A DNA stretch of 64,000 bases, taken from positions 62,001 through 126,000 of the IMG/VR virus record IMGVR_UViG_3300023199_000204. One strand, written 5' to 3'. The notes under the pieces were generated by a model that saw nothing but the letters and a program-made list of their open reading frames with translations, was not told where the DNA came from and ran no database searches. Below, piece after piece: positions 21,913-54,493 of this stretch. Within the stretch, counting starts at the first letter, position 1. Each line of letters starts with the position of its first letter. Both the position numbers and the translations under genes were made by a program.

Positions 21913-22814
21913 TGGATGTTAAGGAAATCATAAGATTATATAAAGGTGGTAAGTCTATTAGACAGATTGCTAAGATAAAACTCTGCTCTGCGACAAAAAT
22001 AAGAAATTTTATGATTAAAAATGAAATTGCTTTGAGAACAAAGGGAGAGGGGCTATCAAAATATTATGAAAACAATATTAAAATGAGTAAGTACTCTAAT
22101 GAAGTTATAACTGGCGAACTTATTGGAGATGCTTATATAAAACCAAACGTTAGACAGTCTTGTTTATCATTTTGTAGTAAACATAAATCATACTGCGATT
22201 ATCTATTTAATATATTTGATAAAGAAAATTTATGCAAATCTTATGTTAAAAAAGTAATTTATTATCATAAATATCATAATAAATATTACACAATATTTAA
22301 GTTAAGAACTGTTTCTACTATACAAATACATCATCTTAGATCCAAATGGTATAAAAATAATATTAAAATTATACCTGATGATTTCAAACTAACTCCAACT
22401 GTAATGCTACACTGGTATATGGGAGATGGAACCTTGCCGAAAGGACAATATGGAGTTTTATGTGTTGATTGTTTTACGAATCAAGAAAATAAATTTTTAT
22501 CTAACCTTATTAACAAAGAAATAGGAATTAAAAGCTCGATAATAAAGTCATTAAATAGAATATTTATTCCAAAAACGTCTATGTCTACATTATTAGATTA
22601 TATGGGAGCCTGCCCAATAAAAGAATTTAATTATAAATGGGATTTAAAACCTATAGGTAGAATTATAGACCCTATCCATATAGATAAAAATAAATTAGAA
22701 AGTTTATATATTAAACAAGATATGACGCAAACACAATTAGCAAAATATTTTAACTGTTCAAAATCTTTAATTAATAAGAAATTACGAAAATATAATATAA
22801 GGAAAAGAAAATGA
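21912..22814 (+). CDS. Free-standing LAGLIDADG homing endonuclease flanked by HTH domains
   Basis: Motifs ITGELIGDAYI and HWYMGDGTL; HTH-like termini (LYKGGKSIRQIAK; MTQTQLAKYFNCSKSLI). Confidence 0.85.
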   Translation: MDVKEIIRLYKGGKSIRQIAKIKLCSATKIRNFMIKNEIALRTKGEGLSKYYENNIKMSKYSNEVITGELIGDAYIKPNVRQSCLSFCSKHKSYCDYLFNIFDKENLCKSYVKKVIYYHKYHNKYYTIFKLRTVSTIQIHHLRSKWYKNNIKIIPDDFKLTPTVMLHWYMGDGTLPKGQYGVLCVDCFTNQENKFLSNLINKEIGIKSSIIKSLNRIFIPKTSMSTLLDYMGACPIKEFNYKWDLKPIGRIIDPIHIDKNKLESLYIKQDMTQTQLAKYFNCSKSLINKKLRKYNIRKRK

Positions 22815-25072
22815 AAATACGATGGAGAGGATTAATTTCAACTCAACATAGTTGGGCGTTTGTTAGTCAATCATTAATAAGAGCCATCAATAACATTGGT
22901 GGGCACGAATTATATATTAAATCAACAAATGGTCTTAAGCATTTTCCAGAAGATTTAAAGCCACAATTGCTTCCTGGCTATCACAATAATTTATTAAAGG
23001 GAGATGCTGAATATTTAAATGAAAAAGGTGAGTTTATCACTGTTAATAAAAATAATCCCTTACCAGAGATTGCTTATAATAATAGACCTTACGATTTAGA
23101 GCTAAGCTATACAATTTTTTATCAAAGCCCTCGTAGATTTTTTGCCGATTCCAAGGCAAGAGCAATTATTTGGAATTTTGAAAGCTCAATTATGCCGCCT
23201 GGATGGCATTTGTATCATAAAGCAATAGATTACTATTTACCTTCTAGTCAATATTCTTTTGATATATTTGCTGATAATGGAGTTCCAAAAGATAAAATGT
23301 TGGTAGTTCCTCACGGAGTAGATACAAATATATTTAATCCTAACATTCCCCCATTTGAATTAAAAACTCAAAAGAAAATAAAGTTTCTTCATAACGCTAT
23401 ACCTCATCATAGAAAACTTCACGAAAAAGTAATTAAAGGGTATTTTAATACTTTTACTGATAAAGATGATGTTTGTTTAATTTTAAAAACTAAATTTCTT
23501 GATCCAAAAAAGCTTAACGAGCACGAAGTTGATGTTCAAGCAATATTAAAAAAGTGTGCCGGAAGAAGAAAAGATTTGCCTGAAATTGAAATTATTCAGT
23601 CTTTTATTCCAGATATTGGCTCTTTATATACGGCCTGCGATGCTGTAATTAGTATGAGTTCCTGTGAGGGGTTCTGGCTGCCTGGGCTAGAGGCTTTGGC
23701 CTGTGGGAGTTTAGTTATAGCCCCAAGGCACGGAGGACAACTTGAGTTTTTAAATGATGATAATTCTATTTTAATAGATACGAAAGAAATGAAGGCTCCA
23801 AGTTCAATGCAGTATTGGACAAATCACCCTGATGCTGTTGTTGGAGATCCGGACATAAAGCATTTTTCTAAGATGCTTTGGAAAGTTTATAAAAATCTAG
23901 AAAAAGAGAAACAAAGAATAAAGGAACCAGCTAAAAAAACTGTTGAAAAATTCACTTGGGAAGCAGCAGCCCAAATGATTTTGGATCTTCCAATTCCCAA
24001 GAAAAGCAAAAGAATTTTTGATAAGGACAGGGTGTTGTTTATAGTTCCATACCTAATGGCAGGTGGTGCTGAAGTTTGGGTCCGTGATGCCATTAACTCT
24101 TTGGATAAAAATATCTATGAAATAGATATTGCTTTTGTAAATGGATTAAATGATGAACTTGTTTCTACCTTTAAAGATGTTGATGCCGAGATTATAGATT
24201 TATCAAATCAAGGCAGGGGGGCAGCCCTAAAGTGTTTAATGGAGTCAGGAAGCTACTCTGTAGTTCATTTTTACAACAGTTTTGCCATATATAATATTAT
24301 TGGAGGAACACATAAACAAGGTTTAAGAGCAAAAATTGTTGAAACCGTTCATAGTGAGCTTAAATGGAGAGACTCTATGAGTAGGGTAGCAACAAGATTA
24401 CCATTTGTTTCTGAAATAATTGGTGTATCAAAGACTATTTGTGAAAAACTTAAAAATATGGGCAATAAAAATGTTTCTTTTGTTCCACAACCAATAAATT
24501 GGGAGCGATTTAAAAAAGAAAAAAATAAAGAAGTTTTAAAAGCAGATAATATACCAAGTGATTTTGTGGTAGGTTTTGTTGGTAGATTATCCACTGAAAA
24601 GAATTTGCCAGTTTTACTTCAAGTTGCGGCGGAACTTCCAGAAGTATCATTTGTAATTATTGGTTCCGGAGCCCAGCGTAAAATATTGGAGAACTTGGCA
24701 AAAAATATAAATAATATATTCTTTTTAGGAAGAAAAGAAAATGTTGAAGACTATTATTGTGCCTTTGACGCCTTAATTCTTCCATCAACTATGGAAGGAA
24801 TGCCCTTAGTTATTCTTGAGGCTATGGCAAGTGGAACTCCTATATTAGCTTCAAGAGTTGGTGCTATTCCAGAAGTGGTTATGGATAATATAAATGGAAA
24901 TCTAATTTCTAATTCTGATTATAAAGGATATATTGAAGCTATCAAGAACTTATTAAATAAAGATTTATGGAACAGGTATTCTCAAGGTAGTTTAACTATA
25001 GCAAGCTCAATAGAAGAGGAAAGTAAAGAAAAGCAAGTAGAAAAAATATACAATAAACTTTTAGGAAAATAA
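22811..25072 (+). CDS. Double GT-B (GT4-like x2) glycosyltransferase
   Basis: Two GT4-type signatures: SSCEGFWLPGLEALACG and STMEGMPLVILEAMASG; VGRLSTEKN. Confidence 0.9.
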   Translation: MKIRWRGLISTQHSWAFVSQSLIRAINNIGGHELYIKSTNGLKHFPEDLKPQLLPGYHNNLLKGDAEYLNEKGEFITVNKNNPLPEIAYNNRPYDLELSYTIFYQSPRRFFADSKARAIIWNFESSIMPPGWHLYHKAIDYYLPSSQYSFDIFADNGVPKDKMLVVPHGVDTNIFNPNIPPFELKTQKKIKFLHNAIPHHRKLHEKVIKGYFNTFTDKDDVCLILKTKFLDPKKLNEHEVDVQAILKKCAGRRKDLPEIEIIQSFIPDIGSLYTACDAVISMSSCEGFWLPGLEALACGSLVIAPRHGGQLEFLNDDNSILIDTKEMKAPSSMQYWTNHPDAVVGDPDIKHFSKMLWKVYKNLEKEKQRIKEPAKKTVEKFTWEAAAQMILDLPIPKKSKRIFDKDRVLFIVPYLMAGGAEVWVRDAINSLDKNIYEIDIAFVNGLNDELVSTFKDVDAEIIDLSNQGRGAALKCLMESGSYSVVHFYNSFAIYNIIGGTHKQGLRAKIVETVHSELKWRDSMSRVATRLPFVSEIIGVSKTICEKLKNMGNKNVSFVPQPINWERFKKEKNKEVLKADNIPSDFVVGFVGRLSTEKNLPVLLQVAAELPEVSFVIIGSGAQRKILENLAKNINNIFFLGRKENVEDYYCAFDALILPSTMEGMPLVILEAMASGTPILASRVGAIPEVVMDNINGNLISNSDYKGYIEAIKNLLNKDLWNRYSQGSLTIASSIEEESKEKQVEKIYNKLLGK

Positions 25073-25073
25073 T

Positions 25074-26615
25074 ATGCCCGAACTTCCAATTTCCTCTTGG
25101 AGAGGTAAATTAATAAGCACGAGAAAGGATTCTAGTGGTAAAAAATATATGGTAATGTCTGGAACAAAGTCTATCCTATATATATCTCTTAAATCAGTGG
25201 AGCCGAATAAAACATATCGTGTAACAATAGATTTAAAATCTGACGGGGGAAATGGGGAAGGCTATTGTAATATTTATGGAAACAGAAAATTTGACTTTCC
25301 TCACGTTAGATTTAAGTGCGAAAAGGGTGGTTGGCAAACCTATGATATAAATATAAAAACTGGTAATTTCCCTAATACAGTGCCACTAGTTTTTCGTATA
25401 TGGAGGCCAGAAAATTCAAGTGGAAAGTTACTGGTAAGAAGAATAATATTTACTTCTATTGGAGATCCTAAAAAAGAACAAAAGGGTCCAGAACTAATAT
25501 CACAACAAACTAGAAATAATGCTTTAAATATAAATGATTCGTCTCAAAATAACCCTATTCCTCCAAAAGTTTTACCGGGAAGGGTGCCAAATGTTTTTAA
25601 ATCAAAACCTATAAAGCCTATTTCTACAGAGGAAAGGCGGTCTCGTAGAAGAAGAATGGCAATTGAAAGAGCGCAAAGAAGAGGGGATTTTTCCGTTGAA
25701 TCAACTCATAAGTTATTCCCCCAGCCCCCTCCAAGAATTTTGCCACAAATTATAGAGCCTCACGGAATAAAAGTTTCAGTAATAATATCTATATTTAATA
25801 GAATAGAGTTTTTTGAAAGGGCTTTATATACCTATGCTAAGCAAACAATAGGAGTGGATAATTTTGAAATAGTTGTAGTTGATGATAAAAGTTCTGATGA
25901 CATAAATGGGTTATGTAAAAGATTTGCCAAAGAGTATGGAGTAAAATTTCAATATATCCTTATAAACAAATATAAAGGGGCCATTGAGCCACGAGGTTTC
26001 ACTCCAGCTTTAAGCAACAATATTGGGTTAAAACACGCAAGGGGCTCTGTTATAGTCATCACTGGTCCCGAAACATTACAAAAAGAAACCAATTTAGAAC
26101 GATCCTGGGAGACTGCTAATAATGGTGCTTGCGTATATGGTAATGTTTATCGCTCCAATTTAAAGTTTGTAAATGTAATTAAAAAAACTGGTGTGGCTGA
26201 GAAATCTTTTTCTGAAATTATAAAAATACGAGGGTCCAAGGCTGATGTTTCAGTGACAAAGGGATTTTGGTGGTATTATATAGCTGTAAGAAAAGAGCAT
26301 TTAATGAGCATAAATGGAGTTGATGAAAGGTTTATGAGAGGAATAAGTGGGGAAGATGATGATCTTGCTAGAAGGATGAAGCGTTCTGGTGTTCCACTGG
26401 TTAGAGAACCAAGTATAGAGGGAATTCATCAAGATCACTCCGCAGAAGATAAAAAAGACCTCCACGCTTTTAGATTTAACTCAAAACAATGGAATAAATT
26501 AAGAAGAATTAATGAGAAGTTATTAAATAGCTGGAATAGAACAAAAAATACTGTTGCGAACACGAATATCGATTGGGGAAGCTCAGAAGCAATAATTAAA
26601 AAGGAGAATTTTTAA
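25074..26615 (+). CDS. GT2 glycosyltransferase with N-terminal jelly-roll/CBM-like domain
   Basis: C-terminal VSVIISIFNR, EIVVVDDKS, GVDERF, GEDDD; N-terminal ~130 aa beta-rich domain and Pro/Arg-rich linker. Confidence 0.85.
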   Translation: MPELPISSWRGKLISTRKDSSGKKYMVMSGTKSILYISLKSVEPNKTYRVTIDLKSDGGNGEGYCNIYGNRKFDFPHVRFKCEKGGWQTYDINIKTGNFPNTVPLVFRIWRPENSSGKLLVRRIIFTSIGDPKKEQKGPELISQQTRNNALNINDSSQNNPIPPKVLPGRVPNVFKSKPIKPISTEERRSRRRRMAIERAQRRGDFSVESTHKLFPQPPPRILPQIIEPHGIKVSVIISIFNRIEFFERALYTYAKQTIGVDNFEIVVVDDKSSDDINGLCKRFAKEYGVKFQYILINKYKGAIEPRGFTPALSNNIGLKHARGSVIVITGPETLQKETNLERSWETANNGACVYGNVYRSNLKFVNVIKKTGVAEKSFSEIIKIRGSKADVSVTKGFWWYYIAVRKEHLMSINGVDERFMRGISGEDDDLARRMKRSGVPLVREPSIEGIHQDHSAEDKKDLHAFRFNSKQWNKLRRINEKLLNSWNRTKNTVANTNIDWGSSEAIIKKENF

Positions 26616-27445
26616 TGAATTTTATGACATATTTTGATGTTAATTATGCTGATAAGGGGTGGGCTTGTCATCACACCTTATATAAATTCCTTGGAGAAGA
26701 ATTAAAGTTATATGTGTTTGCTTTAGATGAAAAAGTATATGAACAGGCAAAAGAAAAGAAGGGAGTGGTTCCTATTAGATTGAGAGAGGTTGAGGAAAAA
26801 TATCCAGAGCTAAAAGATATTAAAAACACGAGATTAGCGAAAGAATATTATGCCACAATGACTCCAATATTTCCTCTATACTTATTTGAAAAATATAATG
26901 ATGATTTATTATTTTATACTGATGCGGACATAGCGTTTTATAGTAATCCAAAAGAGATGCTTGGTGTTTTAGGCAATAAGTCTTTAATGGTTGTGGATCA
27001 CGGAATTGAACCTCCAAGAGCAAAGGTAAGATTTAATGTTGGAATTTTGGCTTACAGGAATGATGAAAATTGTAAAGAGTTTTTGAATTGGTGGAAAGAA
27101 AAATGTATAGAATGGTGTGAATGGAAAACTATGCCTGACGGAAGATGTGCGGACCAGGGATACTTAAACATTATTCATAACGAGCCTGAGAGATTTAAAA
27201 ATACCTTAGCAATACAGCCTCTAAATACTGGTATTAATGTAAGTCCTTGGTGTGCCGAAAATTGTAATGTTATTAAAACAGGAGACGATATTATTATTAA
27301 TAATAAAACGCCTCTTATTTGCTATCATTTTCACGAATTTAAATTAACTCAAAATGGATATTATCCTACTGGATGGAAATTAGGAAATGGTTTAATTCAA
27401 AATGTTTATGAGCCATATTATAAACTTATCAAGAGTGTTAAATGA
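26615..27445 (+). CDS. GT-A fold glycosyltransferase (GT8/GT77-like)
   Basis: YTDADIAF (DxD), FNVGILAY, DQGYLN, CYHFH. Confidence 0.7.
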   Translation: MNFMTYFDVNYADKGWACHHTLYKFLGEELKLYVFALDEKVYEQAKEKKGVVPIRLREVEEKYPELKDIKNTRLAKEYYATMTPIFPLYLFEKYNDDLLFYTDADIAFYSNPKEMLGVLGNKSLMVVDHGIEPPRAKVRFNVGILAYRNDENCKEFLNWWKEKCIEWCEWKTMPDGRCADQGYLNIIHNEPERFKNTLAIQPLNTGINVSPWCAENCNVIKTGDDIIINNKTPLICYHFHEFKLTQNGYYPTGWKLGNGLIQNVYEPYYKLIKSVK

Positions 27446-28389
27446 GCAAAAGAGTTATACCAAAGGGAAAATGTAGTATGTGTGACTCTTTTGCCAAACT
27501 TCCTAAAAATCCAAAAGAAATAGGTAGAATTTGTGAAAAATGTTATAGGCTAAATATTCAGCCAAAAATAAAATGTTCCATTTGTGGTAAATTGAAAATA
27601 ATTCACAAGGACACTTTTTGTCTAAAATGTTATAAAATTACATATGAACCTCCAAAGCACATCTGCTTTATATGTAAAAATAAATGTATATCTAATAAAA
27701 AAACTAGTTCAGGTCCAGTTTGTTTAAAATGCTATGATAAGAACTTTAAACCCAAAAAAAATTGTGAAAATTGTAAAAGAATAAAAGTAGTTAAAAAATA
27801 CATTAATTTTAAGCCGTTATGTGGGGGATGTGCCTCTAATTTTATAAAAAAACAAAAATGTGTAGAATGTAATAATATTAGGAAGATAAATAAAATAACA
27901 GTTAAGGGGACAGTTTGCGGAAAGTGTTATAATAAAAATCATAAACCAAAGCATAGATGTACTAGGTGTAAAAATATAAAATATTTAGCATCTGCCTCGC
28001 CCAATCTTTGTTTTAATTGTTATTACATTAAAAAAAGGAAAGAAGATTATAAATTTTATATTTTAACCAATTTAAGAAATAGTGTGAGAAGTGCTTTTAA
28101 CAAATATTCAAAGACGGGCAAGATAATAAATAGTTCATCTTATGGAATAAATTATAAAAAAATAATAGAACATCTTGGTAATTGTCCAGGGGAAAGTAAA
28201 GAATATCATATTGATCATATAATACCTTTGTCTGCTTTTGATTTAAATGATCAAATACATATTAAAGCAGCATTTTCTCCTGAAAACCATCAGTGGCTTA
28301 AAATAGAGGATAATTTAAAAAAGAGCAATAAATATGATAAAAATAAATTTGATAAACTAATTATGAAATATAAGGAAGGAAAGTTATGA
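27442..28389 (+). CDS. HNH homing-type endonuclease with six N-terminal CxxC..CxxC units
   Basis: YHIDHIIPLSAFDL...ENHQWLKIEDNLKKSNKY; 12 CxxC motifs; ATGA overlaps at both ends. Confidence 0.85.
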   Translation: MSKRVIPKGKCSMCDSFAKLPKNPKEIGRICEKCYRLNIQPKIKCSICGKLKIIHKDTFCLKCYKITYEPPKHICFICKNKCISNKKTSSGPVCLKCYDKNFKPKKNCENCKRIKVVKKYINFKPLCGGCASNFIKKQKCVECNNIRKINKITVKGTVCGKCYNKNHKPKHRCTRCKNIKYLASASPNLCFNCYYIKKRKEDYKFYILTNLRNSVRSAFNKYSKTGKIINSSSYGINYKKIIEHLGNCPGESKEYHIDHIIPLSAFDLNDQIHIKAAFSPENHQWLKIEDNLKKSNKYDKNKFDKLIMKYKEGKL

Positions 28390-29051
28390 GCAAGCTGATT
28401 AACGCTGACTGGACAGATGAAAGGTTAGCACAAGAAAATAATAAGATAAATGAAGAATATTTTAAAAAAGGAATTCATAAAGACTATCCTGCCTATTTTA
28501 AATTAAAAGAGGCGGTTGAGTGGATTTTACAGAGGGATAATAAGAGGCCTCTTAAGTTTCTTGATTATGGTTGCGGAACTGCTTGGTATGGAGTATATTT
28601 AAAAGATGAAGGTTTATTTGAACATATAGAGTATAATGGGGCAGATTTGTCAAAATCAATGTGCGACAAAGCAAAAACAAACCTACCACAATCAAACTTT
28701 ATTGTTGCTGACGCCAGTGAAGAGCATTTTGATAAAGAATATGATGTTGTTACTGAAATGGCTGTTTTGGAATTGGTTCCAAAATGGGAAGAAGCAATGA
28801 AAAATATATTAAAATCTAGTGGGAAATGGTGTGTTTTTCATAGGATGTATTTCAAAAGTCACGGCGAAGAAACGGTAAAGGAACAGGTTAATACTTATTT
28901 AAAAATTCCAGATATTAGAATACATATAAGTTTGGATGATTTTGATTATATATTATCAAAAAACAACTTCGATTTGGTTAGAGCAGACCGCTGGGAGAAA
29001 AATAATTTGTATAAGCAAGGAACTTTTATAGCAAGGAGAAAAGATGCCTAA
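28386..29051 (+). CDS. Class I SAM-dependent methyltransferase
   Basis: FLDYGCGTA, YNGADLSKSM, FIVADA. Confidence 0.85.
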   Translation: MSKLINADWTDERLAQENNKINEEYFKKGIHKDYPAYFKLKEAVEWILQRDNKRPLKFLDYGCGTAWYGVYLKDEGLFEHIEYNGADLSKSMCDKAKTNLPQSNFIVADASEEHFDKEYDVVTEMAVLELVPKWEEAMKNILKSSGKWCVFHRMYFKSHGEETVKEQVNTYLKIPDIRIHISLDDFDYILSKNNFDLVRADRWEKNNLYKQGTFIARRKDA

Positions 29052-45231: not shown

Positions 45232-45668
45232 TGGCATCTATAAGACATATAGGAATTACCGTTAGTAATTTATCAAAATCTTTAAATTTTTATGAAAGCT
45301 ACTTTGGTTTTAAAATTCAAAGAAAAATGGAAGAATCTGGTGAAGTTCTTGATAATTTTTCCGCATTAAAAAATGTAGAAGTAATAACAGTAAAGCTTAG
45401 TGATAATAAGGAGCAGCTTTTAGAACTTCTTTGTTATAAATCTCACCCTAATAATAAAGTTGAGTTAAATTTGAAAAGACAAATTTGTTATGTAGGTTGC
45501 TCACATTTTGCTTTAACTGTAGATGATTTAGATGAGATATATAATAAAATGTGCGAAAACGGGATTATATTTAATTACCCTCCTCAAATTTCATCAGATA
45601 ATAAGGTAAAGATTGCTTTTTGTAAGGATCCAGATGGAGTTTTAATAGAATTGGTTGAGGAACTATGA
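45231..45668 (+). CDS. VOC/glyoxalase-fold protein
   Basis: IRHIGITVSNLSKSLNFY, SHFALTVDDL, DPDGVLIELVE. Confidence 0.9.
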   Translation: MASIRHIGITVSNLSKSLNFYESYFGFKIQRKMEESGEVLDNFSALKNVEVITVKLSDNKEQLLELLCYKSHPNNKVELNLKRQICYVGCSHFALTVDDLDEIYNKMCENGIIFNYPPQISSDNKVKIAFCKDPDGVLIELVEEL

Positions 45669-46351: not shown

Positions 46352-46352
46352 T

Positions 46353-47757: not shown

Positions 47758-48374
47758 ATTTGAAAGATTTTAAAAAATATATAAAAGCTCATATTAAAAA
47801 TAGTTTGTCAATACTAAATAAGGTTAAAAAAGAATGTAATAAAGATATATGTAAAGCTATAGATATAATCCTTAATTCATTATTAGCGGGGAACAAATTA
47901 ATGTTATGTGGAAATGGTGGAAGTGCCGCTGATTGTCAACATATGGCTGCTGAATTCATAAGCTCATTCTCTAAAAATATAAATAGAAAGGGTATTCCTG
48001 CAATAGCATTAACAACAGATACTTCAATTTTAACGGCATATTCTAATGATTTTGGATATGATGGTGTTTTTAAAAGACAAGTTGAAACTTTAGGAAAACC
48101 AGGTGATGTTTTGTTAGGAATAAGTACCAGTGGAAACTCAAAAAATATCATTCTAGCTTTGGAGGCTGCGTCTAACATTGGGATTAAAAGAATATCACTT
48201 ACTGGAAAAGATGGAGGCTTGGTTAAAAATGTTTCAGAAGTATGTATAAAAGTCCCTAGTTCGGACACTATGTATATACAAGAATGTCATTTAACAATAG
48301 AACATATAATATGTGCTATGGTTGAAGAGAAAATAGTAAATAATAAAAATTTTCTTATCAAGGGAGTTATATAA
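47736..48374 (+). CDS. gmhA: GmhA-like SIS-domain sugar-phosphate isomerase
   Basis: CGNGGSAADCQHMAAE, TAYSND, STSGNSKN, IQECH; alternative TTG start at 47760. Confidence 0.88.
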   Translation: MASEGRINLKDFKKYIKAHIKNSLSILNKVKKECNKDICKAIDIILNSLLAGNKLMLCGNGGSAADCQHMAAEFISSFSKNINRKGIPAIALTTDTSILTAYSNDFGYDGVFKRQVETLGKPGDVLLGISTSGNSKNIILALEAASNIGIKRISLTGKDGGLVKNVSEVCIKVPSSDTMYIQECHLTIEHIICAMVEEKIVNNKNFLIKGVI

Positions 48375-48445: not shown

Positions 48446-49675
48446 ATGCACGAGAAAAAATGTTCTAAATGTAAAAATATATTAGATTTTTCTAATTTTA
48501 GTAAAAGTACATCTCGTGGGGGTGATAAATTTAGTCTTAGCTATTATTGTAAATCTTGTGTAAGTGAATATAATAAAGAAAAAAATGTTTATAAAAACTA
48601 TTATATAAAAAATAAAAAGGCATGCTTAGAAAAGTGTAAAAGATGGAGAGAAAAAAATATAGAGTATAGGAGAGAATACGATAGAGAATATAGTAAAAAA
48701 AATATAAAGAAAAAGCTAGCATATAAAAAAAAAAAGTATAGAGAAGATGAAACATATCGGCTCAAAGAAAATCTACGCTCTTCCCTGCAGCGTGCTTTTA
48801 AAACTCAAAATACACAAAAAATGTTTTTATCTAAAACTTATGGAATAAATTATGATGAAATAATTAATTATCTTGGACCAAAACCAGAGAGTAATTATGA
48901 AATAGACCATATATTACCTTGTTCATCTTTTAATCATAATAACCCTATGGAAATATGGATGTGTTGGAATAAAGACAATTTTCAATGGCTTCCATTAACA
49001 GAAAATCGTAGGAAAAATAACTACTATAATGATGAATATTATTTAAAATATTATAAAGAAAAAGCAAATATATATGTAAAAAATAATTTTGAGAACTTAA
49101 CTTCTAAATTACATTTAGGATGCAGCAATGTATATTTAGAAAATTATCTAAATATAGACATCAATCCAACATATTATTCTGGTTTTGTAGAGCAAAATTT
49201 TATTGAAAATGTTAAAACTAATTTTAATAATTATTATAGATATGATTTTTGTAAAGGTCCAGAATATTCAGTGGTAGATGTTGGGGCAGACATTAGCAAA
49301 CATATTCCCATTGATAGTAATACTTGTGATGAAGTTGTGATGCTTCACGTTTTGGAACATTTTCCTAAATATGTTGTAGGAAATGTTTTAGATGAAATAA
49401 ACAGAGTTTTAAAATATGGTGGGGTATTTGTTGTAGGAGTTCCAGATATTATTGAAACTTCAAAATTACTTTTAAAAGCGTCTACTCCCGAGGAAGAAAA
49501 CTGGGCATTAAGGCTAATTGATGGTTCCCAACGTAATGAATGGAGTCATCATTTTATGAGTTTCAGTAAAAAGAGTTTAATTAGATTATTAGAAGAACAC
49601 GGGTTTGGAGAGTTTGAAGATTTACCTAATATAAACTTTTATCCTGCTGTTCATTTGAAAGCAAGGAAGTTATAA
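48446..49675 (+). CDS. In-frame fusion of HNH homing endonuclease and class I methyltransferase
   Basis: N-terminal CSKC..CKSC and YEIDHILP..NFQWL..EN; C-terminal KLHLGCS..NIDI, HVLEH, RVLKYGG; no stop between the domains. Confidence 0.85.
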   Translation: MHEKKCSKCKNILDFSNFSKSTSRGGDKFSLSYYCKSCVSEYNKEKNVYKNYYIKNKKACLEKCKRWREKNIEYRREYDREYSKKNIKKKLAYKKKKYREDETYRLKENLRSSLQRAFKTQNTQKMFLSKTYGINYDEIINYLGPKPESNYEIDHILPCSSFNHNNPMEIWMCWNKDNFQWLPLTENRRKNNYYNDEYYLKYYKEKANIYVKNNFENLTSKLHLGCSNVYLENYLNIDINPTYYSGFVEQNFIENVKTNFNNYYRYDFCKGPEYSVVDVGADISKHIPIDSNTCDEVVMLHVLEHFPKYVVGNVLDEINRVLKYGGVFVVGVPDIIETSKLLLKASTPEEENWALRLIDGSQRNEWSHHFMSFSKKSLIRLLEEHGFGEFEDLPNINFYPAVHLKARKL

Positions 49676-50673
49676 TGAAAATAAATAATACTGATAAAAT
49701 TTTGGTGACTGGCGGACGAGGCTTTCTTGGAAAGCACGTTGTTCAAGAATTGAAAAATAGGGGCTATGAAGATATAACTATTGCGCCTCCAAGTTCTCAA
49801 TTAGATTTAAGAAACAAAGATTTAGTTGAAGGATATTTTCAGGCATTAAAGCCTGATGGAGTAATTCATTTGGCAGCTTTCTGCGGTGGAATTGGAAAAA
49901 ATCAAGAAAACCCGAACAAAATGTTGAGAGATAATATAAGTATTAATATGAATGTTCTTGATTCATTTAGAAATACTGGTGGAAAACTTGTTGCCGTTGG
50001 CTCTGTTTGTTCTTACCCTAAAAACTGTCCTGTGCCTTTTAAAGAAGAAGATTTGTTTTCAGGATTTCCAGAGGAAACTAATTCTCCTTACGGCATAGCG
50101 AAAAGAGTTATGCTTATGGATATGTTGTCTTATGGTAATAAATGGTATAAAGGTAGAGAGGTGTTTTTGATGCCTGCTAATCTTTATGGACCAGGAGATG
50201 GATTTTTTAAGGATGGGGCTCACGTAATTCCTGATATTATATCAAAAATACATACGACTATCGAAGCAAAAAAAGCATATCAGGCAACTCATCCTGGCGA
50301 TAAGTATAAATATAATTATCTTGAATGTTGGGGTGATGGAAGTCCAACTAGAGAATTCCTATATGTCCAGGACGCAAGCAGAGCCATTGTGGCGGCTTTG
50401 GAGAAGGCAGATGATGTTGGACCATATAATATTGGAAACGGCGTTGAGACGAGTATTAAAGAGCTTGTGGAGAAAATTGCTGAAATTATGAAGTTTGATG
50501 GAGAAATAAGGTGGGACGCAAATAAGCCAAATGGTCAGCCAAAAAGATGTTTGAATGTTAATAAAGCAAAAGAAGCATTTGGTTTTAAAGCAGAAGTTGA
50601 TTTAGATTTAGGATTAAATGAAACAATTTTATGGTTCAAAGAATTAGTAAAAGGAAAAATTAAAAAGGATTAA
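49675..50673 (+). CDS. fcl: GDP-L-fucose synthase family
   Basis: GGRGFLG, HLAAFCGGI..N, CSYPK, YGIAKR, NLYGP, WGDGSPTREFLY, KPNGQPKR. Confidence 0.92.
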   Translation: MKINNTDKILVTGGRGFLGKHVVQELKNRGYEDITIAPPSSQLDLRNKDLVEGYFQALKPDGVIHLAAFCGGIGKNQENPNKMLRDNISINMNVLDSFRNTGGKLVAVGSVCSYPKNCPVPFKEEDLFSGFPEETNSPYGIAKRVMLMDMLSYGNKWYKGREVFLMPANLYGPGDGFFKDGAHVIPDIISKIHTTIEAKKAYQATHPGDKYKYNYLECWGDGSPTREFLYVQDASRAIVAALEKADDVGPYNIGNGVETSIKELVEKIAEIMKFDGEIRWDANKPNGQPKRCLNVNKAKEAFGFKAEVDLDLGLNETILWFKELVKGKIKKD

Positions 50674-50676: not shown

Positions 50677-51654
50677 ATGAAAAAAACAGCGTTAATAATT
50701 GGCGTATGCGGTCAAGCGGGTTCATATTTAGCAGAGTTTTTACTAGAAAAAGACTATCGTGTTGTGGGAGTAATGAGACGAAATGCGACCGCTGATCTTG
50801 GAAACGCCACACATTTAGAGAATGATATTGAAATTGTTGAAGGAGACATTACTGATTTTAGCAGTATATTGAAAATTATTCAACTAACCCGTCCTCAAGA
50901 ACTATATTCATTGGCAGCACAGTCTCACGTTAAAACAAGTTTTGATCAGCCAATTGCTTCTGTAAATATTAATTTACTTGGTGTGGTTAACATACTTGAA
51001 TCTGTTAAAACTTTGGGGTATTCTACAAGAATTGCCCAAGCATCGACTTCTGAATTATGGGGAGCAACTGCTCCACCACATAATGAAGATAGTTATATGG
51101 CTCCAAGGAGCCCTTATGCTATTGCCAAACTTGGTGCCCATTGGTTTGTTAAAATGTATCGGGAAGCATATGGGATGTATGCTTGTAATGCTATTATTCA
51201 TAACTATGAAAGCCCTAGGCGTGGTCCGAAGTTTGTAACTCGTAAAATTACATTAGGAGTTGCCGAATGTTTAAAAGACCCAGACTTTAGGCTTAAGCTT
51301 GGTAATATAAAAGCAAAAAGGGATTGGTCACACGCAAAAGATATGGTCCGTGGTTGGTGGACGATGCTTCAACAGCCAGAGCCAGATGATTTTGTATTTG
51401 GTTCTGGTCAAATGAGGAGCGTGGAAGAATTTTTAGAAAAAGCATTTTCAATTGTCGAATTAGATTGGCAAGACAAAGTAGATATAGATAGGTTCCATAT
51501 GCGACCACTTGAAGTGGATGCCCTATGTGCCGATACATCGAAAGCAAAGGAAATATTGAACTGGGAGCCAGAGATAAGTTTTGATGAGCTGGTGGAAGAA
51601 ATGGTTAAATCAGATTGTAAATTATTGGGAGTAGGTAGTGAAAATTATAAATAG
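50677..51654 (+). CDS. gmd: GDP-mannose 4,6-dehydratase
   Basis: GQAGSYLAEFLL, LAAQSHV..SF, QASTSE, SPYAIAK, ESPRRG..FVTRKI, RDWSHAKD. Confidence 0.95.
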   Translation: MKKTALIIGVCGQAGSYLAEFLLEKDYRVVGVMRRNATADLGNATHLENDIEIVEGDITDFSSILKIIQLTRPQELYSLAAQSHVKTSFDQPIASVNINLLGVVNILESVKTLGYSTRIAQASTSELWGATAPPHNEDSYMAPRSPYAIAKLGAHWFVKMYREAYGMYACNAIIHNYESPRRGPKFVTRKITLGVAECLKDPDFRLKLGNIKAKRDWSHAKDMVRGWWTMLQQPEPDDFVFGSGQMRSVEEFLEKAFSIVELDWQDKVDIDRFHMRPLEVDALCADTSKAKEILNWEPEISFDELVEEMVKSDCKLLGVGSENYK

Positions 51655-51919
51655 TGGATTTGAAATTGGAGACAAAATAAAACATACTAAAGAATACATA
51701 GAGTGTTGTACTAATAAAAACTATAATGCTTCAGACATATTTATAGTTTACGATGTCCTTTTTTCCAGAGGTTATGAAAAATTAACAATTTGTTTTCAAG
51801 ATTCGTGGGCAATAAAAAATAATAAACACTATTCAGTTGATATTTCCTATGATAGAAAATTTTATCAGAAAGTAAATTATAAATATTTTCAAGAAAAAGT
51901 ATTTGAAAAGGTGAATTAA
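51638..51919 (+). CDS. Small tandem paralogue 1 (FxIGD-type family)
   Basis: MKIINSGFEIGDKIKH...KVFEKVN. Confidence 0.7.
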   Translation: MKIINSGFEIGDKIKHTKEYIECCTNKNYNASDIFIVYDVLFSRGYEKLTICFQDSWAIKNNKHYSVDISYDRKFYQKVNYKYFQEKVFEKVN

Positions 51920-52255
51920 ATGAAAATACTTAATACTTTTGCTTTTAAAATAGGTGATAGAATTAAATTTACAAAAGAATTTATGGAGTTTTTCTATCCA
52001 GGAATTCACGGACCTGGTAGAGCCATATATTTAATAAATGAGATAAAACAAATGAGGAAGTCTGTAAAAAAGGTTAATCCTAATTGTAAAAAGGGTCATA
52101 TATATTTATATATATATGATATAACTCACGGTAATAACAATAACAGCAAAATAAATGAAATAACATTTTATTTATATCCAAACAACACCCTTGCCTATGG
52201 ATCTGAATTTAAAGGGAAAGTATTTAAAGGGAAAGTATTTGAGAGGGTAAAATGA
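51920..52255 (+). CDS. Small tandem paralogue 2
   Basis: MKILNTFAFKIGDRIKF...KVFERVK; in-frame 15-bp tandem duplication at 52208..52237. Confidence 0.7.
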   Translation: MKILNTFAFKIGDRIKFTKEFMEFFYPGIHGPGRAIYLINEIKQMRKSVKKVNPNCKKGHIYLYIYDITHGNNNNSKINEITFYLYPNNTLAYGSEFKGKVFKGKVFERVK

Positions 52256-52572
52256 AAATATTAAACACAAATTCAAATTTACCATTTAAAATTGGTGATA
52301 AAATTATATATAATCCAAAATTAAAACATTGGGTTAAACATTCTGGAATTGTTAAGTGGAAAGATTTAATTGATAGAATAGACAAATTTAATAAAAACCC
52401 AAGAATTGTGGATGATATTCAAAGAGGCGGCGACTGCTACTATGTTTGTTTAAGAATTAATACCAAATTAGTAATTGGTCATACTATGTATCAGTTGGAT
52501 TTAAATGGAAGATCTTTAGAAACTATATGGAGAGCATTCCCTAATCCATTATTTGTGAGGCTTGAAAAATGA
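52252..52572 (+). CDS. Small tandem paralogue 3
   Basis: MKILNTNSNLPFKIGDKIIY...LFVRLEK. Confidence 0.7.
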   Translation: MKILNTNSNLPFKIGDKIIYNPKLKHWVKHSGIVKWKDLIDRIDKFNKNPRIVDDIQRGGDCYYVCLRINTKLVIGHTMYQLDLNGRSLETIWRAFPNPLFVRLEK

Positions 52573-52865
52573 AAGTATTAAATAGTGATTTTGATGTTGG
52601 TAATATTGTTGTTTATACCAAAGAATATAAAAAATATCTTGTTGAAAATAAATCAACAATACTAAAGCCTTTGGAATTTTATGAACAGGAATTTACTGTT
52701 TATGATGTAATAAAATTTCGCAGAATGAAAATAACTAGATTGTGTTTAAAAGACGAAGATTTTCTTAAAAAAGATTTAGTATATACTGTGGATTTAAATC
52801 CAGCTGGGACTTCAGTTGTAGAAAGGAAAAAATTTTCTGGGCAGGTTTTTGAGAGGTTAAAATGA
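52569..52865 (+). CDS. Small tandem paralogue 4
   Basis: MKVLNSDFDVGNIVVY...QVFERLK. Confidence 0.7.
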   Translation: MKVLNSDFDVGNIVVYTKEYKKYLVENKSTILKPLEFYEQEFTVYDVIKFRRMKITRLCLKDEDFLKKDLVYTVDLNPAGTSVVERKKFSGQVFERLK

Positions 52866-53647: not shown

Positions 53648-54493
53648 ATGGAAAGAAAAAAAATATTTATTATTGGGTCGGCAGGATTTTTAATGTCGAA
53701 TTTTACAAGATATTTGTTATATAGAACAAAAGATTATGAAATAATAAGCGTTGATGATATAGGAACAATAGGGAAGAAAAAGCGGATATATTTTAATACT
53801 TTACACAAGTATTATCCTTCAGGGTTAAATAGAGAGTCATTAATTAATATTATTAAATTTGAAAATCCTGATATGATCATAAACGGATTATACAGTCCAA
53901 AACAATTGTTTAGCGAAATAATGTCATTTGATGTTAATAAAGTTTTATATTCCTTAGGCTATGGCGAAAAAACAATTCATATTGAAGGGAGAGACCATTA
54001 TGATGAAGCCTCAAATGTACTTGAGAAATCTGCGTCAAAGTTTATACTTAAATCTGGGGGAACTGTAATAAAAATACCAAATATTATAGGAATGCGAGAA
54101 GATAATGTTAGAGGATCAATAAGATTCACTATGTTTGATTTATTAAATAGCAAGCAAGATAGTAAAGCTATTATTAATGATACATATCCCACTGCTTATG
54201 CTGAAGATTTAGCATCATTAATTTGGTATGTAATGGAGAAAGAGATTAAGGGAAGCGTATTAATGCCAAAGTTAGGTGATATTAACACAATTGATATAGC
54301 ACACACTGTTAATGAGGTTTCTTTCAATAATGAAAAAGAAATACTAATGGTTGATGAAGGAGAAATTTTTCATACTGACTATGATGATCTTAAAAGTATA
54401 GATGGCTGGATTCCTGACTCAACTTCTATAGAGGATGTTATTAAAAACACAGTGGCGTGGTATAATAGTAATCCGTGGGCCTTATGGATGTAG
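53648..54493 (+). CDS. Degenerate NAD-dependent epimerase/dehydratase (RmlB-like)
   Basis: IIGSAGFLMSNFTRYLL..YEIISVD resembles the RmlB N-terminus, but TDExYG and YxxSK are not found. Confidence 0.6.
   Translation: MERKKIFIIGSAGFLMSNFTRYLLYRTKDYEIISVDDIGTIGKKKRIYFNTLHKYYPSGLNRESLINIIKFENPDMIINGLYSPKQLFSEIMSFDVNKVLYSLGYGEKTIHIEGRDHYDEASNVLEKSASKFILKSGGTVIKIPNIIGMREDNVRGSIRFTMFDLLNSKQDSKAIINDTYPTAYAEDLASLIWYVMEKEIKGSVLMPKLGDINTIDIAHTVNEVSFNNEKEILMVDEGEIFHTDYDDLKSIDGWIPDSTSIEDVIKNTVAWYNSNPWALWM

What the first reader, a model, noticed from the sequence alone, without database searches (positions are those of the whole stretch)
22811..54493. 32 kb phage glycan-synthesis island with nucleotide-sugar pathways but no export machinery
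Seen: about 10 GT domains (GT4x2, several GT2, GT8/77-like, GT47-like, CgeB-like, GT29-like), 4-5 methyltransferases, RmlA+RmlB+DegT, Gmd+Fcl, NeuA+NeuB, GmhA-like and a HAD-nucleotidyltransferase. All are co-oriented directly after the tail genes. There is no Wzx/Wzy/Wzm/Wzt, no initiating phosphoglycosyl transferase and no obvious membrane protein. Established: RmlA/B plus DegT without RmlC/D points to a 4- or 3-amino-dideoxyhexose (as in the Mimivirus viosamine route), and Gmd/Fcl are also encoded by chloroviruses that self-glycosylate capsids. Inference: soluble, cytoplasmic glycosylation of virion proteins, convergent with giant eukaryotic viruses, rather than host O-antigen conversion or DNA hypermodification.
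Basis: partly seen in the sequence, partly recalled or inferred. Interest (0 to 1): 0.72.

Follow-up and report, generated by a model that had tools for sequence, protein, structure and literature searches.

The report
Jumbo-phage hypervariable glycan-synthesis island
A 316-kb uncultured jumbo phage carries a 32-kb block of soluble sugar-building enzymes with no export machinery. It most likely coats the phage's own particles with complex sugars, but that target is inferred and not shown.

Summary
Window 22811-54493 has 38 co-directional ORFs, of which 28-29 are glycan genes:
- 11 glycosyltransferase proteins (12 GT domains)
- 5 methyltransferases, one of them broken
- RmlA/RmlB/DegT, Gmd/Fcl, and NeuA/NeuB next to a sialyltransferase-fold enzyme
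- GmhA and a HAD-nucleotidyltransferase fusion

The window lies in a 316,473-bp virus record, not a bacterial chromosome. The island has no membrane protein. The whole record has no Wzx, Wzy, Wzm or initiating transferase, no dNMP hydroxymethylase and no integrase.

- Four related phage contigs carry an island at the same place. In those whose flanks were read it lies between the tail fibres and a tubulin gene.
- A core set is shared (GT4-GT4, CgeB-like GT, two GT2, methyltransferase, Fcl, Gmd). The accessory modules differ, and the one fully bounded relative has about 12 kb against 32 kb here.
- Homing endonucleases are scattered through the island.
- A terminator-like hairpin and a conserved small RHH-like gene separate it from the tail genes.
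- 93% of all genes are on the + strand, so co-orientation is not evidence.

Virion glycosylation in the cytoplasm is the best reading (about 0.45). Remodelling of host surface glycans through host export machinery remains a serious rival (about 0.3). Large glycan clusters are already known in cyanophages, so this is a new member of a known kind.

The parts
20775..20804 (+). Terminator-like hairpin (13-bp stem followed by a T run) right after the last fibre-like gene. It marks the upstream boundary.
21727..21912 (+). 61-aa ORF, 68-79% identical in two relatives and so better conserved than its neighbours. It looks like a ribbon-helix-helix regulator and is a candidate regulator of the island.
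   Evidence: RHH_1 is only sub-threshold (E 0.08)
21912..22814 (+). LAGLIDADG homing endonuclease inserted in front of the first GT gene. It is not present at this spot in relatives L016/L017.
22811..25072 (+). Fusion of two GT4 (GT-B) glycosyltransferase domains, 753 aa. It is the conserved first gene of the island (49% identical in relatives).
25074..26615 (+). GT2 with an N-terminal beta-sandwich domain that resembles carbohydrate-binding modules. The GT2 part is a paralog of 40373.
   Evidence: the model has pLDDT 65, so this is a lead only
26615..27445 (+). Nucleotid_trans (GT77-type) glycosyltransferase.
   Evidence: 28.5 bits, cut-off 22
27442..28389 (+). HNH homing-endonuclease paralog. 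It is not a glycan enzyme.
28386..29051 (+). SAM-dependent methyltransferase.
29044..29931 (+). GT2 glycosyltransferase.
29928..30845 (+). GT47 (exostosin-type) glycosyltransferase. It has no tblastn match in 50,697 GenBank phage records.
30848..32182 (+). DUF4379 zinc-finger repeat protein. It belongs to a multicopy family in this genome and is a probable selfish element.
32179..33279 (+). DegT-family sugar aminotransferase. Its nearest solved relatives are WbpE and QdtB (3-aminotransferases) and a scyllo-inositol transaminase.
33282..34223 (+). dTDP-glucose 4,6-dehydratase (RmlB-like).
   Evidence: 344 bits, cut-off 365
34216..34806 (+). Methyltransferase split by an in-frame TAA at 34510-34512. 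Probably a pseudogene.
34806..35546 (+). Glucose-1-phosphate thymidylyltransferase (RmlA-like).
35543..36214 (+). GT-A-fold glycosyltransferase with no Pfam hit.
   Evidence: Atlas score 0.99, TM 0.93
36211..37569 (+). Fusion of a HAD domain (beta-phosphoglucomutase family) and a sugar-1-phosphate nucleotidylyltransferase. It is 69% identical over the 80 residues readable in relative L108.
37566..37949 (+). 127-aa ORF of unknown function.
38056..39177 (+). DUF4379 repeat protein. It is inserted between HAD-NTP and the next GT; these two genes are adjacent in L108.
39178..39903 (+). GT-A-fold glycosyltransferase of a family that is almost exclusively viral.
39894..40376 (+). 160-aa protein of unknown function (PHROG 34507). 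By eye it has a glycerophosphodiesterase-like HRG motif. It is conserved in L108.
40373..41239 (+). GT2 glycosyltransferase. Core gene, 50-56% identical in all relatives.
41312..41908 (+). Methyltransf_24 / CmcI-type sugar O-methyltransferase.
41909..42958 (+). CgeB-family (Glyco_trans_1_2) glycosyltransferase. Core gene.
42951..43712 (+). Soluble enzyme with the sialyltransferase fold (GT29-like). It is the probable nonulosonic-acid transferase.
43709..44398 (+). CMP-nonulosonate synthetase (NeuA/PseF-like).
44395..45231 (+). Nonulosonic-acid synthase (NeuB family). At 278 aa it is shorter than the 327-329-position NeuB/PseI models and matches only their first about 277 positions.
45231..47757 (+). 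Glyoxalase-fold protein, SDR, methyltransferase and a second SDR. These are probable tailoring enzymes for the nonulosonic acid or another sugar.
47736..48374 (+). Sedoheptulose-7-phosphate isomerase (GmhA-like).
48446..49675 (+). HNH endonuclease (residues 1-215) fused in frame to a core methyltransferase (residues 221-409). The relatives have only the methyltransferase.
49675..50673 (+). GDP-fucose-synthase-like epimerase/reductase (Fcl-like). Core gene.
50677..51654 (+). GDP-mannose 4,6-dehydratase (Gmd). Core gene, 61-66% identical in relatives.
51638..52865 (+). Four tandem paralogous ORFs of 93-111 aa. No homolog was found outside this phage population.
52862..53647 (+). GT2 glycosyltransferase. 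Core gene.
53648..54493 (+). Degenerate SDR/epimerase-like protein. It is the conserved last gene of the island in relatives L023, L024 and L108.
54475..55452 (+). HNH endonuclease paralog split by an in-frame TAA at 54886-54888. It marks the downstream boundary.
55452..56885 (+). Tubulin/PhuZ-like GTPase. It is the conserved downstream flank (64-68% identical in relatives).

Best explanation
The island is a self-contained, cytoplasmic glycan-assembly locus of a jumbo myophage of roughly 315 kb.

What it makes (assigned from family matches):
- A dTDP-amino-6-deoxyhexose, from RmlA, RmlB and DegT.
- A GDP-6-deoxyhexose of the fucose type, from Gmd and Fcl acting on host GDP-mannose.
- A CMP-nonulosonic acid, from NeuB-like and NeuA-like enzymes. 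Tailoring by the two SDRs is inferred from their position only.
- Probably a further NDP-sugar, from GmhA and the HAD-nucleotidyltransferase fusion. This one is inferred.

How the glycan is built: eleven soluble glycosyltransferases assemble these sugars and host UDP-sugars into a heteroglycan. Four intact methyltransferases O-methylate it. The sialyltransferase-fold enzyme probably caps it with the nonulosonic acid.

Acceptor (inferred, not shown): the phage's own structural proteins. They would be glycosylated in the cytoplasm before lysis, so no lipid carrier, flippase or polymerase is needed. Mycobacteriophage capsids, giant-virus fibrils and Bacillus spore-crust proteins are glycosylated in this way.

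Evolution: the locus sits at a fixed position in the lineage. A conserved core and swappable accessory modules give each phage a different glycan.
For: Gene content and solubility.

No Wzx, Wzy, WecA/MraY, ABC-2 permease or phosphoglycosyl transferase in 316 kb. No integrase. No dNMP hydroxymethylase.

A second contig of the lineage is 312,596 bp long, so the record is probably near complete.

Lineage evidence:
- The island is at the same locus in four relatives, with a shared core and variable modules.
- The GT29-like, NeuA and NeuB genes recur together in other large phage contigs.
- Several of the GT families are almost exclusively viral.

The locus adjoins the tail-fibre genes.

Functional parallels:
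- The CgeB family is a cytoplasmic protein O-glycosyltransferase family of spore crusts. The sps operon pairs it with a DegT/NeuB/NeuA nonulosonic-acid pathway, without export (PMC13577073, PMC7439481). That the sps operon also holds Rml genes is from memory.
- Virion glycosylation is established in mycobacteriophages (Freeman 2023, as cited in PMC12619734).
Against: - No acceptor has been identified. No structural protein shows an obvious Ser/Thr-rich glycosylation tract.
- Expression timing is unknown. A terminator-like hairpin and a possible regulator separate the island from the late tail genes, and early or middle replication genes follow it.
- Co-orientation is uninformative.
- Soluble glycosyltransferases also build lipid-linked glycans that the host flips.
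- Comparable cyanophage clusters are usually read as host-surface modification (PMC12801897).
- Completeness of the record is unproven: there are no terminal repeats, no Terminase_6N hit, and CheckV gives 18%.
Confidence: 0.45

Rival explanations
1. Host-envelope remodelling. The phage enzymes build or modify a lipid-linked (undecaprenyl- or lipid A-core-linked) glycan at the inner face of the host membrane. The host's own initiating transferase, flippase and ligase then export it. This changes the LPS, capsule or glycoprotein of the infected cell, for example to block superinfection or to stop progeny sticking to debris.
For: - Glycosyltransferases that act on lipid-linked acceptors need no membrane spans, so one search does not exclude them.
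- Prophage-encoded soluble EpaA/EpaB alter host capsule pseudaminic acid with no phage export genes (PMC12053666).
- Clusters in large cyanomyoviruses (up to 13 GTs, with Gmd) are usually read this way (PMC12801897).
- The double-GT4 enzyme and the methyltransferases recall ABC-dependent O-antigen polymerases and chain terminators. This point is from memory.
- Hypervariability is typical of surface-antigen loci.
Against: - No integrase was found, so the phage is probably lytic and has little time to benefit.
- 32 kb, about 10% of the genome, is a large investment for a change that lasts minutes to hours.
- There is no initiating transferase to prime a new glycan.
- The nearest relatives of several GTs are almost exclusively viral, not from host loci.
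- RmlB is at most 47% identical to any cellular homolog, so it was not recently taken from a host surface locus.
Confidence: 0.3
2. Another soluble or mixed target. The glycan could be attached to non-structural phage or host cytoplasmic proteins, to a small molecule or glycolipid, or released as a free polysaccharide at lysis. Different modules could also serve different targets.
For: - The island is modular, and its modules recur independently in other phages.
- A carbohydrate-binding-like domain on one GT2 suggests elongation of a polymer rather than recognition of a protein.
- Four ORFan paralogs and several unknown ORFs lie inside the island.
Against: - No precedent is known to me for a phage making free cytoplasmic polysaccharide on this scale.
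- One tightly packed, overlapping gene array suggests one product.
Confidence: 0.15
3. DNA hypermodification. The glycosyltransferases would decorate hydroxymethylated bases of the phage DNA with sugars to evade restriction.
For: - Phage GT-B and GT-A enzymes glycosylate 5-hmC and 5-hmU DNA, sometimes with several sugars (Pyle 2024, cited in PMC12619734).
- Part of the fused GT4 matches the 'GT4-conflict' family.
Against: - No thymidylate-synthase-family hydroxymethylase is found in 316 kb.
- Nonulosonic acid, aminosugar and 6-deoxyhexose pathways, a GmhA, five methyltransferases and eleven GTs go far beyond any described DNA glycan.
- The genome was assembled from ordinary shotgun data in two samples without trouble.
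Confidence: 0.03
4. The stretch is bacterial chromosome or a chimeric assembly, not phage.
For: The enzymes belong to families common in bacterial polysaccharide loci.
Against: - On both sides, in one contig, lie a baseplate, sheath initiator and fibres upstream, and tubulin, UvsW and DnaB downstream.
- The same synteny is seen in four independent contigs from other samples.
- GC content and strand bias match the rest of the genome.
- One contig of run X1 spans window 32001-37500 inside the island.
Confidence: 0.01

Closest known systems
Cell-wall / 'LPS' gene clusters of large cyanomyoviruses (P-SSM2, S-SCSM1, S-SCSM2R)
   Same: - Phages above 200 kb with many soluble glycosyltransferases (13 in S-SCSM2R), nucleotide-sugar epimerases and Gmd.
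- No proven target (PMC12801897). Gmd is 46-48% identical to ours.
   Different: - A different phage lineage: there is no nucleotide or structural-gene similarity, and the nearest sheath and tubulin hits are actinophages and Bacillus phage G at 25-29%.
- Here all genes sit in one 32-kb array at a fixed locus.
- The array has a nonulosonic-acid triad, GT47-like and GT29-like enzymes, GmhA and Rml/DegT. The GT47-like and GT29-like enzymes have no tblastn match in 50,697 GenBank phage records.
Mycobacteriophage virion glycosylation (Che8, Corndog, Myrna; Freeman et al. 2023, as cited in PMC12619734 and PMC12801897)
   Same: Phage-encoded soluble glycosyltransferases modify the capsid and tail-tube proteins inside the cell, with no export machinery. 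That methyltransferases take part is from memory.
   Different: - Those systems have a few genes and, as far as I recall, no nucleotide-sugar pathways.
- No homology to them was tested directly, beyond a distant sheath hit to Myrna.
- The acceptor here is unknown.
Giant-virus autonomous glycosylation (Mimivirus fibril glycans, chlorovirus capsid glycans)
   Same: - Virus-encoded nucleotide-sugar pathways (aminosugar, 6-deoxyhexose, Gmd/Fcl), soluble GTs and sugar methyltransferases.
- GT29-like proteins of Mimiviridae ChoanoV1 are among the best structural matches.
   Different: - The host is bacterial and the virus is a tailed phage.
- The aminotransferase is nearer to 3-aminotransferases than to viosamine-type 4-aminotransferases.
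- No sequence-level kinship to the giant-virus genes was shown.
Bacillus subtilis spore-crust glycosylation (cgeAB/cgeCDE and spsA-L)
   Same: - A particle built inside a cell is glycosylated by soluble enzymes and freed by lysis.
- The enzyme set has a CgeB-family GT, GT2, DegT (SpsC), NeuB (SpsE) and NeuA (SpsF) (PMC7439481, PMC13577073, PMC11708026). Rml enzymes are part of the set as I recall it.
- SpsE is among the nearest solved NeuB relatives. Homologs of 41909 are auto-named CgeB.
   Different: - This is an analogy, not ancestry. The identities are low.
- No CgeA-like acceptor was sought or found, and the phage's host is unknown.
Wzx/Wzy- or ABC-transporter-dependent O-antigen and capsule loci
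   Same: - Clustered nucleotide-sugar genes, GTs and methyltransferases.
- Hypervariable content at a fixed locus.
   Different: The initiating transferase, flippase, polymerase, chain-length regulator and ABC transporter are all absent from the record.

Membership tests
Wzx/Wzy or ABC-dependent surface-polysaccharide locus | Initiating phosphoglycosyl transferase (Bac_transf or WecA/MraY type) | tested here: not met
   PF02397 and PF00953 give no hit in 316 kb; the control genomes score
Wzx/Wzy or ABC-dependent surface-polysaccharide locus | Flippase (Wzx), polymerase/ligase (Wzy_C) or ABC-2 permease (Wzm) | tested here: not met
   PF01943, PF04932 and PF01061 give no hit. The hydropathy scan finds only an M50 peptidase, a PiT-like permease and a tape-measure-like protein as multi-pass proteins.
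Phage DNA glycosyl-hypermodification system | dCMP/dUMP hydroxymethylase (thymidylate-synthase family) that supplies the base to be glycosylated | tested here: not met
   PF00303 gives no hit. ThyX-type and other routes were not tested.
Virion (protein) glycosylation system of phages or giant viruses | Virus-encoded soluble glycosyltransferases, with or without methyltransferases | tested here: met
Virion (protein) glycosylation system of phages or giant viruses | Glycan covalently attached to capsid, tail or fibre proteins | not testable with these tools
   This needs purified virions. No Ser/Thr-rich acceptor tract stands out.
Virion (protein) glycosylation system of phages or giant viruses | Late expression together with the structural genes | tested here: inconclusive
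   No RNA run holds the sequence. A terminator-like hairpin and an RHH-like ORF lie between the tail genes and the island. No promoter motif was found.
Nonulosonic (sialic-acid-like) acid pathway | NeuB-family synthase and CMP-synthetase | tested here: met
   PF03102 234.6 bits; TIGR03569 243 bits and PseI 180 bits, both below the equivalog cut-offs; CTP_transf_3 with PseF as best hit
Nonulosonic (sialic-acid-like) acid pathway | Upstream enzymes: a 4,6-dehydratase, aminotransferase, N-acetyltransferase and hydrolysing 2-epimerase (Pse/Leg), or NeuC (Neu5Ac) | tested here: inconclusive
   No Epimerase_2 and no acetyltransferase were seen in the island. The 291-aa epimerase at genome position 303276 sits next to the GT29-like gene in L021. 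DegT could serve this pathway or the dTDP pathway. Which nonulosonic acid is made is unresolved.
GT29 sialyltransferases | Match to PF00777 above the gathering score, and the GT-A variant sialyltransferase fold | tested here: met
   32.1 bits against a cut-off of 23. Model pLDDT 93. The 44 best PDB matches are GT29 or GT42 sialyltransferases, with TM 0.4-0.56.
GT29 sialyltransferases | Full set of sialyl motifs (L, S, III, VS) and a type II membrane anchor | tested here: inconclusive
   Only the motif-L region aligns by sequence (Pfam positions 55-133; 5bo6 at E 0.04). The hydropathy scan lists no hydrophobic segment for this protein. A His (H211) is conserved in at least 90% of the family's 21 members, but it was not mapped to the catalytic base. 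I call it GT29-like, not a proven GT29.
dTDP-amino-6-deoxyhexose route (viosamine or Qui3N/Fuc3N type) | RmlA, RmlB and a DegT aminotransferase, without RmlC or RmlD | tested here: met
   No RmlC-type cupin came up in the Pfam scans of the island's named ORFs.
dTDP-amino-6-deoxyhexose route (viosamine or Qui3N/Fuc3N type) | 3,4-ketoisomerase (needed for 3-amino sugars) and an N-acyltransferase | tested here: not met
   No FdtA or acyltransferase family hit. The 127-aa ORF at 37566 has no histidine. The aminotransferase nevertheless ranks nearest to 3-aminotransferases.
GDP-L-fucose (or other GDP-6-deoxyhexose) pathway | Gmd and an Fcl-type epimerase/reductase | tested here: met
   Gmd 341 bits (cut-off 415); Fcl 226 bits (cut-off 500), which is diverged. 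The exact product was not determined.
CgeB-family glycosyltransferase | Match to PF13524 above the cut-off | tested here: met
   99.2 bits against a cut-off of 25. Homologs are auto-named 'spore maturation protein CgeB'.

The most novel reading that the evidence does not exclude
This lineage of roughly 315-kb jumbo phages may coat its virions with complex, methylated heteroglycans capped by a nonulosonic acid. The glycans would be built entirely in the host cytoplasm by phage enzymes. The hypervariable locus would then amount to a set of 'virion serotypes'. That would be a bacterial-virus counterpart of giant-virus autonomous glycosylation, using a soluble enzyme with the sialyltransferase fold.
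Probability: 0.4. Interest if true: 0.8.

Novelty: new member of a known kind. Interest (0 to 1): 0.55.

Why it matters
If the glycan is on the virion, protein glycosylation of phage particles would extend well beyond the few-gene systems of mycobacteriophages. The phage would supply its own donors for at least three sugars, and possibly a fourth.

The fixed position and swappable modules imply diversifying selection on the glycan. The cause could be adhesion, resistance to proteases or grazers, or recognition by hosts, but that is speculation.

The soluble GT29-like, NeuA and NeuB genes recur together in several large phage contigs. They are a concrete candidate for a new class of nonulosonic-acid transferase, which would be useful to glycobiology whatever the acceptor.

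If the target is instead the host envelope, this would be one of the largest surface-remodelling modules known in an apparently lytic phage.

Tried and rejected
- Stop-codon recoding as the cause of the two in-frame stops: rejected. Both are TAA, the commonest stop (301 of 489 ORFs), and coding density under code 11 is 89%.
- Assembly error at the broken methyltransferase: unlikely. A contig from a second sample has the identical sequence.
- Promoter and timing inference: failed.
  - Sigma-70-like hits are at chance level.
  - A k-mer enrichment over 197 intergenic regions found only tRNA T-loops.
  - No RNA run holds the phage.
- Host inference: failed.
  - RmlB's best cellular matches are at most 47% identical and spread over many phyla.
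  - The only hint is a PiT-like permease whose nearest clusters are mostly from Bacteroidota.
- Link to the published 'moraphages', which are large aquatic phages with four core GT families (PMC12619734): not established. The paper mentions neither tubulin nor any shared identifiers.
- First metagenome scan with the full tubulin alignment: no result, because the patterns fell in a low-complexity N-terminus. A second scan with the core domain worked.
- Sequence searches of the unknown ORFs 27442, 35543 and 39178 against PDB found nothing. PHROGs named none of ten unknown ORFs.
- The 127-aa ORF 37566 as an FdtA-type ketoisomerase: rejected by eye, because it has no histidine.
- The 6-TM protein at genome position 273854 as a Wzy or flippase: rejected. 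It is a PiT-like phosphate/sulfate permease.
- Ser/Thr-rich acceptor tracts in structural proteins: nothing convincing.

Full report
**Setting**

The window is bases 62001-126000 of a 316,473-bp IMG/VR virus record. GC content is 32%, and 456 of 489 predicted ORFs are on the + strand. Upstream of the finding lie:
- a sheath initiator, a Baseplate_J protein and a 2278-aa fibre with a LamG domain;
- a 937-aa protein with dockerin and EF-hand motifs, and two PKD-domain proteins;
- a tail sheath at genome position 46.5 kb.

Downstream lie a tubulin/PhuZ-like GTPase, a UvsW-type helicase and a DnaB helicase. The record also has 32 tRNA genes. This is a highly divergent jumbo myophage. The nearest cultured matches are Bacillus phage G for tubulin (25% identity) and actinophages such as Myrna for the sheath (28%). 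No tyrosine integrase was found.

**Observation**

Between 22811 and 54493 there are 38 co-directional ORFs, mostly overlapping by a few bases.

Pfam assigns nine glycosyltransferase proteins:
- a GT4-GT4 fusion and four GT2;
- a GT77-type Nucleotid_trans and a GT47 exostosin-type enzyme;
- a CgeB-family Glyco_trans_1_2 and a GT29-like enzyme.

Two further ORFs without Pfam hits (35543, 39178) are GT-A-fold transferases by ESM Atlas features and structure (scores 0.99, TM 0.87-0.93). That gives 11 GT proteins and 12 GT domains.

There are five methyltransferases. One of them (34216-34806) is cut by an in-frame TAA at 34510, and a contig from a second sample carries the same sequence.

The sugar-nucleotide enzymes are DegT, RmlB, RmlA, a HAD (beta-phosphoglucomutase family)-nucleotidyltransferase fusion, NeuA-like, NeuB-like, two SDRs, a glyoxalase-fold protein, GmhA, Fcl-like, Gmd and a degenerate SDR-like protein. 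All score clearly for their families but below NCBIfam equivalog cut-offs. I therefore name the sugar classes with confidence and the exact products without.

Outside the island I found only two GT2 genes and one epimerase, at genome positions 302.6-306 kb. The clustering is far beyond chance.

1. Three island ORFs and part of a fourth are homing-endonuclease-like.
   - 27442 is an HNH paralog.
   - 30848 and 38056 are DUF4379 zinc-finger repeat proteins, with further copies at genome positions 15838, 23090 and 118885.
   - The first 215 residues of 48446 are an HNH domain fused in frame to a methyltransferase. In relatives that methyltransferase stands alone.
   - A LAGLIDADG gene sits just before the first GT.
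   - A further HNH gene, split by an in-frame TAA at 54886, follows the last island gene.
2. The tail module ends with a strong terminator-like hairpin at 20775-20804.
   - About 900 bp further on is a 61-aa ORF (21727-21912). It is 68-79% identical in relatives, while the neighbouring genes are about 50% identical.
   - By eye it looks like a ribbon-helix-helix protein, but the Pfam RHH_1 hit is only sub-threshold.
   - The island thus appears to be its own unit, with a possible regulator, rather than a continuation of the tail operon.

**Relatives**

Four other contigs belong to the same lineage:
- L016/L023, a contig of 134-139 kb;
- L017, a 33-kb contig;
- L024, a 28-kb contig;
- L108, a 312,596-bp contig.

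Where the flanks can be read they match ours: fibres at about 50% identity upstream (L016, L017) and tubulin at 64-68% downstream (L016/L023, L024, L108).

All carry a glycan island there, but its content differs.
- The shared core is GT4-GT4, a CgeB-like GT, two GT2, one methyltransferase, Fcl-like, Gmd and the SDR-like last gene.
- In L016 the island is about 12 kb.
- L108 adds the HAD-nucleotidyltransferase, a GT-A and the 160-aa protein (the same trio as ours, without the DUF4379 insertion). It also has a SIS-domain protein, a TylF-type methyltransferase, radical-SAM/SPASM genes, a second CgeB-like GT and an intein inside Gmd.
- Among these relatives, the Rml/DegT module, the GT47-like and GT77-like enzymes and the nonulosonic-acid module were found only in our phage.

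Two contigs of 312.6 kb and 316.5 kb suggest that the record is close to a full genome. No terminal repeat or Terminase_6N hit was found, and CheckV gives 18%.

**The nonulosonic-acid module**

The gene order is GT29-like (42951), NeuA-like (43709), NeuB-like (44395).

- The GT29-like protein belongs to a family with only 21 members in 5.8 billion proteins.
- Its AlphaFold model is confident (pLDDT 93).
- Its 44 best PDB matches are all sialyltransferases: ST8SiaIII, ST6Gal1, ST3Gal1 and ST6GalNAc2 of GT29, and CstI/CstII of GT42.
- The best viral matches include GT29-annotated proteins of Mimiviridae ChoanoV1 and of uncultured tailed phages.
- In an unrelated 203-kb phage-like contig the same three genes lie side by side inside another large island. 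In a 49.7-kb contig all three occur, within about 10 kb of one another.
- In the 203-kb contig the island also holds homologs of two genes that in our phage sit at genome positions 303-304 kb.

I take the enzyme to be the nonulosonic-acid transferase. This is inferred from fold and gene context. Which nonulosonic acid is made cannot be told, because no NeuC, PseG or LegG-type enzyme and no N-acetyltransferase was found.

**Other pathways**

- DegT, RmlB and RmlA are contiguous, which fits a dTDP-amino-6-deoxyhexose. The aminotransferase ranks nearest to the 3-aminotransferases WbpE and QdtB, but no 3,4-ketoisomerase was detected. The 3- versus 4-amino question is open.
- Gmd and Fcl-like are core genes, and relatives have them without GmhA. 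A GDP-fucose-type product from host GDP-mannose is the default reading.
- GmhA and the HAD-nucleotidyltransferase may give an NDP-heptose or another sugar. No kinase was found, so this is speculation.

**Export and alternative targets**

- The island has no multi-pass membrane protein.
- The whole record lacks Wzx, Wzy_C, WecA/MraY, ABC-2 permease and Bac_transf families, while the control genomes score for them.
- The only 6-TM protein of unknown type is a PiT-like phosphate/sulfate permease.
- No thymidylate-synthase-family hydroxymethylase is present. Together with the sugar repertoire, this makes DNA glycosylation very unlikely.

**Interpretation**

The anatomy shows a self-sufficient, soluble pathway from central metabolites to a methylated heteroglycan. 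The acceptor is not shown.

I favour virion proteins (about 0.45) for these reasons:
- The phage appears lytic.
- It invests about 10% of its genome in the locus.
- It has no primer enzyme for a lipid-linked glycan.
- Several GT families are almost exclusively viral.
- The locus adjoins the fibre genes.
- There are good precedents for glycosylating a particle inside the cytoplasm. Examples are mycobacteriophage virions (cited in PMC12619734) and giant viruses. The Bacillus spore crust is another: it uses a CgeB-family transferase together with a DegT/NeuB/NeuA nonulosonic-acid pathway (PMC7439481, PMC13577073), and, as I recall, Rml genes.

The main rival (about 0.3) is remodelling of host surface glycans through the host's own carrier and flippase. 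That is how similar cyanophage clusters are usually read (PMC12801897), and it has a proven small-scale precedent in prophage EpaA/EpaB (PMC12053666).

**Novelty**

Large glycan gene clusters in big phages are known, with up to 13 GTs and Gmd in cyanomyoviruses, and their target is unresolved. This is a new member of that kind in a new lineage. It stands out for:
- its size;
- its three or four donor pathways;
- the soluble enzyme with the sialyltransferase fold;
- GT47-like and GT29-like genes with no tblastn match in 50,697 GenBank phage records;
- the clear picture of a fixed-position, core-plus-accessory hypervariable locus.

Noticed in passing
window 21912-22814, 27442-28389, 30848-32182, 38056-39177, 48446-49090, 54475-55452, 56885-57586; genome 15838-18351, 23090-24421: Homing-endonuclease-like genes (LAGLIDADG, HNH, DUF4379 zinc-finger repeats) are unusually dense in and around the island. 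One is fused in frame to a methyltransferase, and one is split by a TAA stop. In relative L108 the Gmd gene carries an intein, and L024 has a LAGLIDADG gene between Fcl and Gmd.
   Followed up: partly
window 34510-34512 and 54886-54888: Two in-frame TAA stops split a methyltransferase and an HNH endonuclease. The first is also present in a second sample. They are probably pseudogenes, and there is no sign of stop-codon recoding.
   Followed up: yes
window 51638-52865: Four tandem paralogous small ORFs (93-111 aa) lie between Gmd and the last GT2. They are absent from relatives, and no homolog was found in 5.8 billion proteins apart from this phage's own copies. Function unknown.
   Followed up: partly
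window 21727-21912: A 61-aa ORF is more conserved than its neighbours (68-79% identity in relatives). It looks like a ribbon-helix-helix regulator and sits just upstream of the island in relatives L016 and L017 as well.
   Followed up: partly
genome 302627-306050 (L014:16627-18441 and beyond): A second small glycan cluster holds a GT2, a 291-aa epimerase, a 98-aa ORF and another GT2. In other phages the epimerase lies beside the GT29-like gene and the 98-aa ORF close to NeuB, so this cluster probably serves the nonulosonic-acid pathway.
   Followed up: partly
window 55452-56885: A tubulin/PhuZ-like GTPase is conserved at 64-68% identity in relatives but only 25% identical to Bacillus phage G. 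Whether this phage builds a spindle or a nucleus-like compartment was not examined.
   Followed up: no
genome 250802-251467 and 273854-274942 (L012:4802-5464, L013:7854-8939): The phage encodes an M50 intramembrane peptidase and a PiT-like phosphate/sulfate permease. The permease's nearest clusters are mostly from Bacteroidota, which is a weak hint about the host.
   Followed up: partly
genome 163000-316000 (L007-L015): All 32 tRNA genes are on the + strand and lie in the second half of the record. They include several isoacceptor duplicates.
   Followed up: no
window 16003-18816 and 1777-3795: A 937-aa fibre-region protein carries dockerin-type and EF-hand calcium-binding motifs. A 672-aa protein has six hydrophobic segments at residues 71-208 and an invasin-like Ig domain, so it may be a tape-measure or membrane-insertion protein.
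   Followed up: no
genome 306711-309477 (L015:711-3474): An N6/N4 DNA methylase, an R2K-type ATP-grasp protein and a fatty-acid-hydroxylase-family protein lie close to the second glycan cluster.
   Followed up: no
window 25074-25523: The N-terminal domain of one GT2 models as a beta-sandwich that resembles carbohydrate-binding modules (CBM4, 6, 16, 35). The model confidence is only moderate (pLDDT 65), and the Pfam CBM_4_9 hit is sub-threshold.
   Followed up: partly
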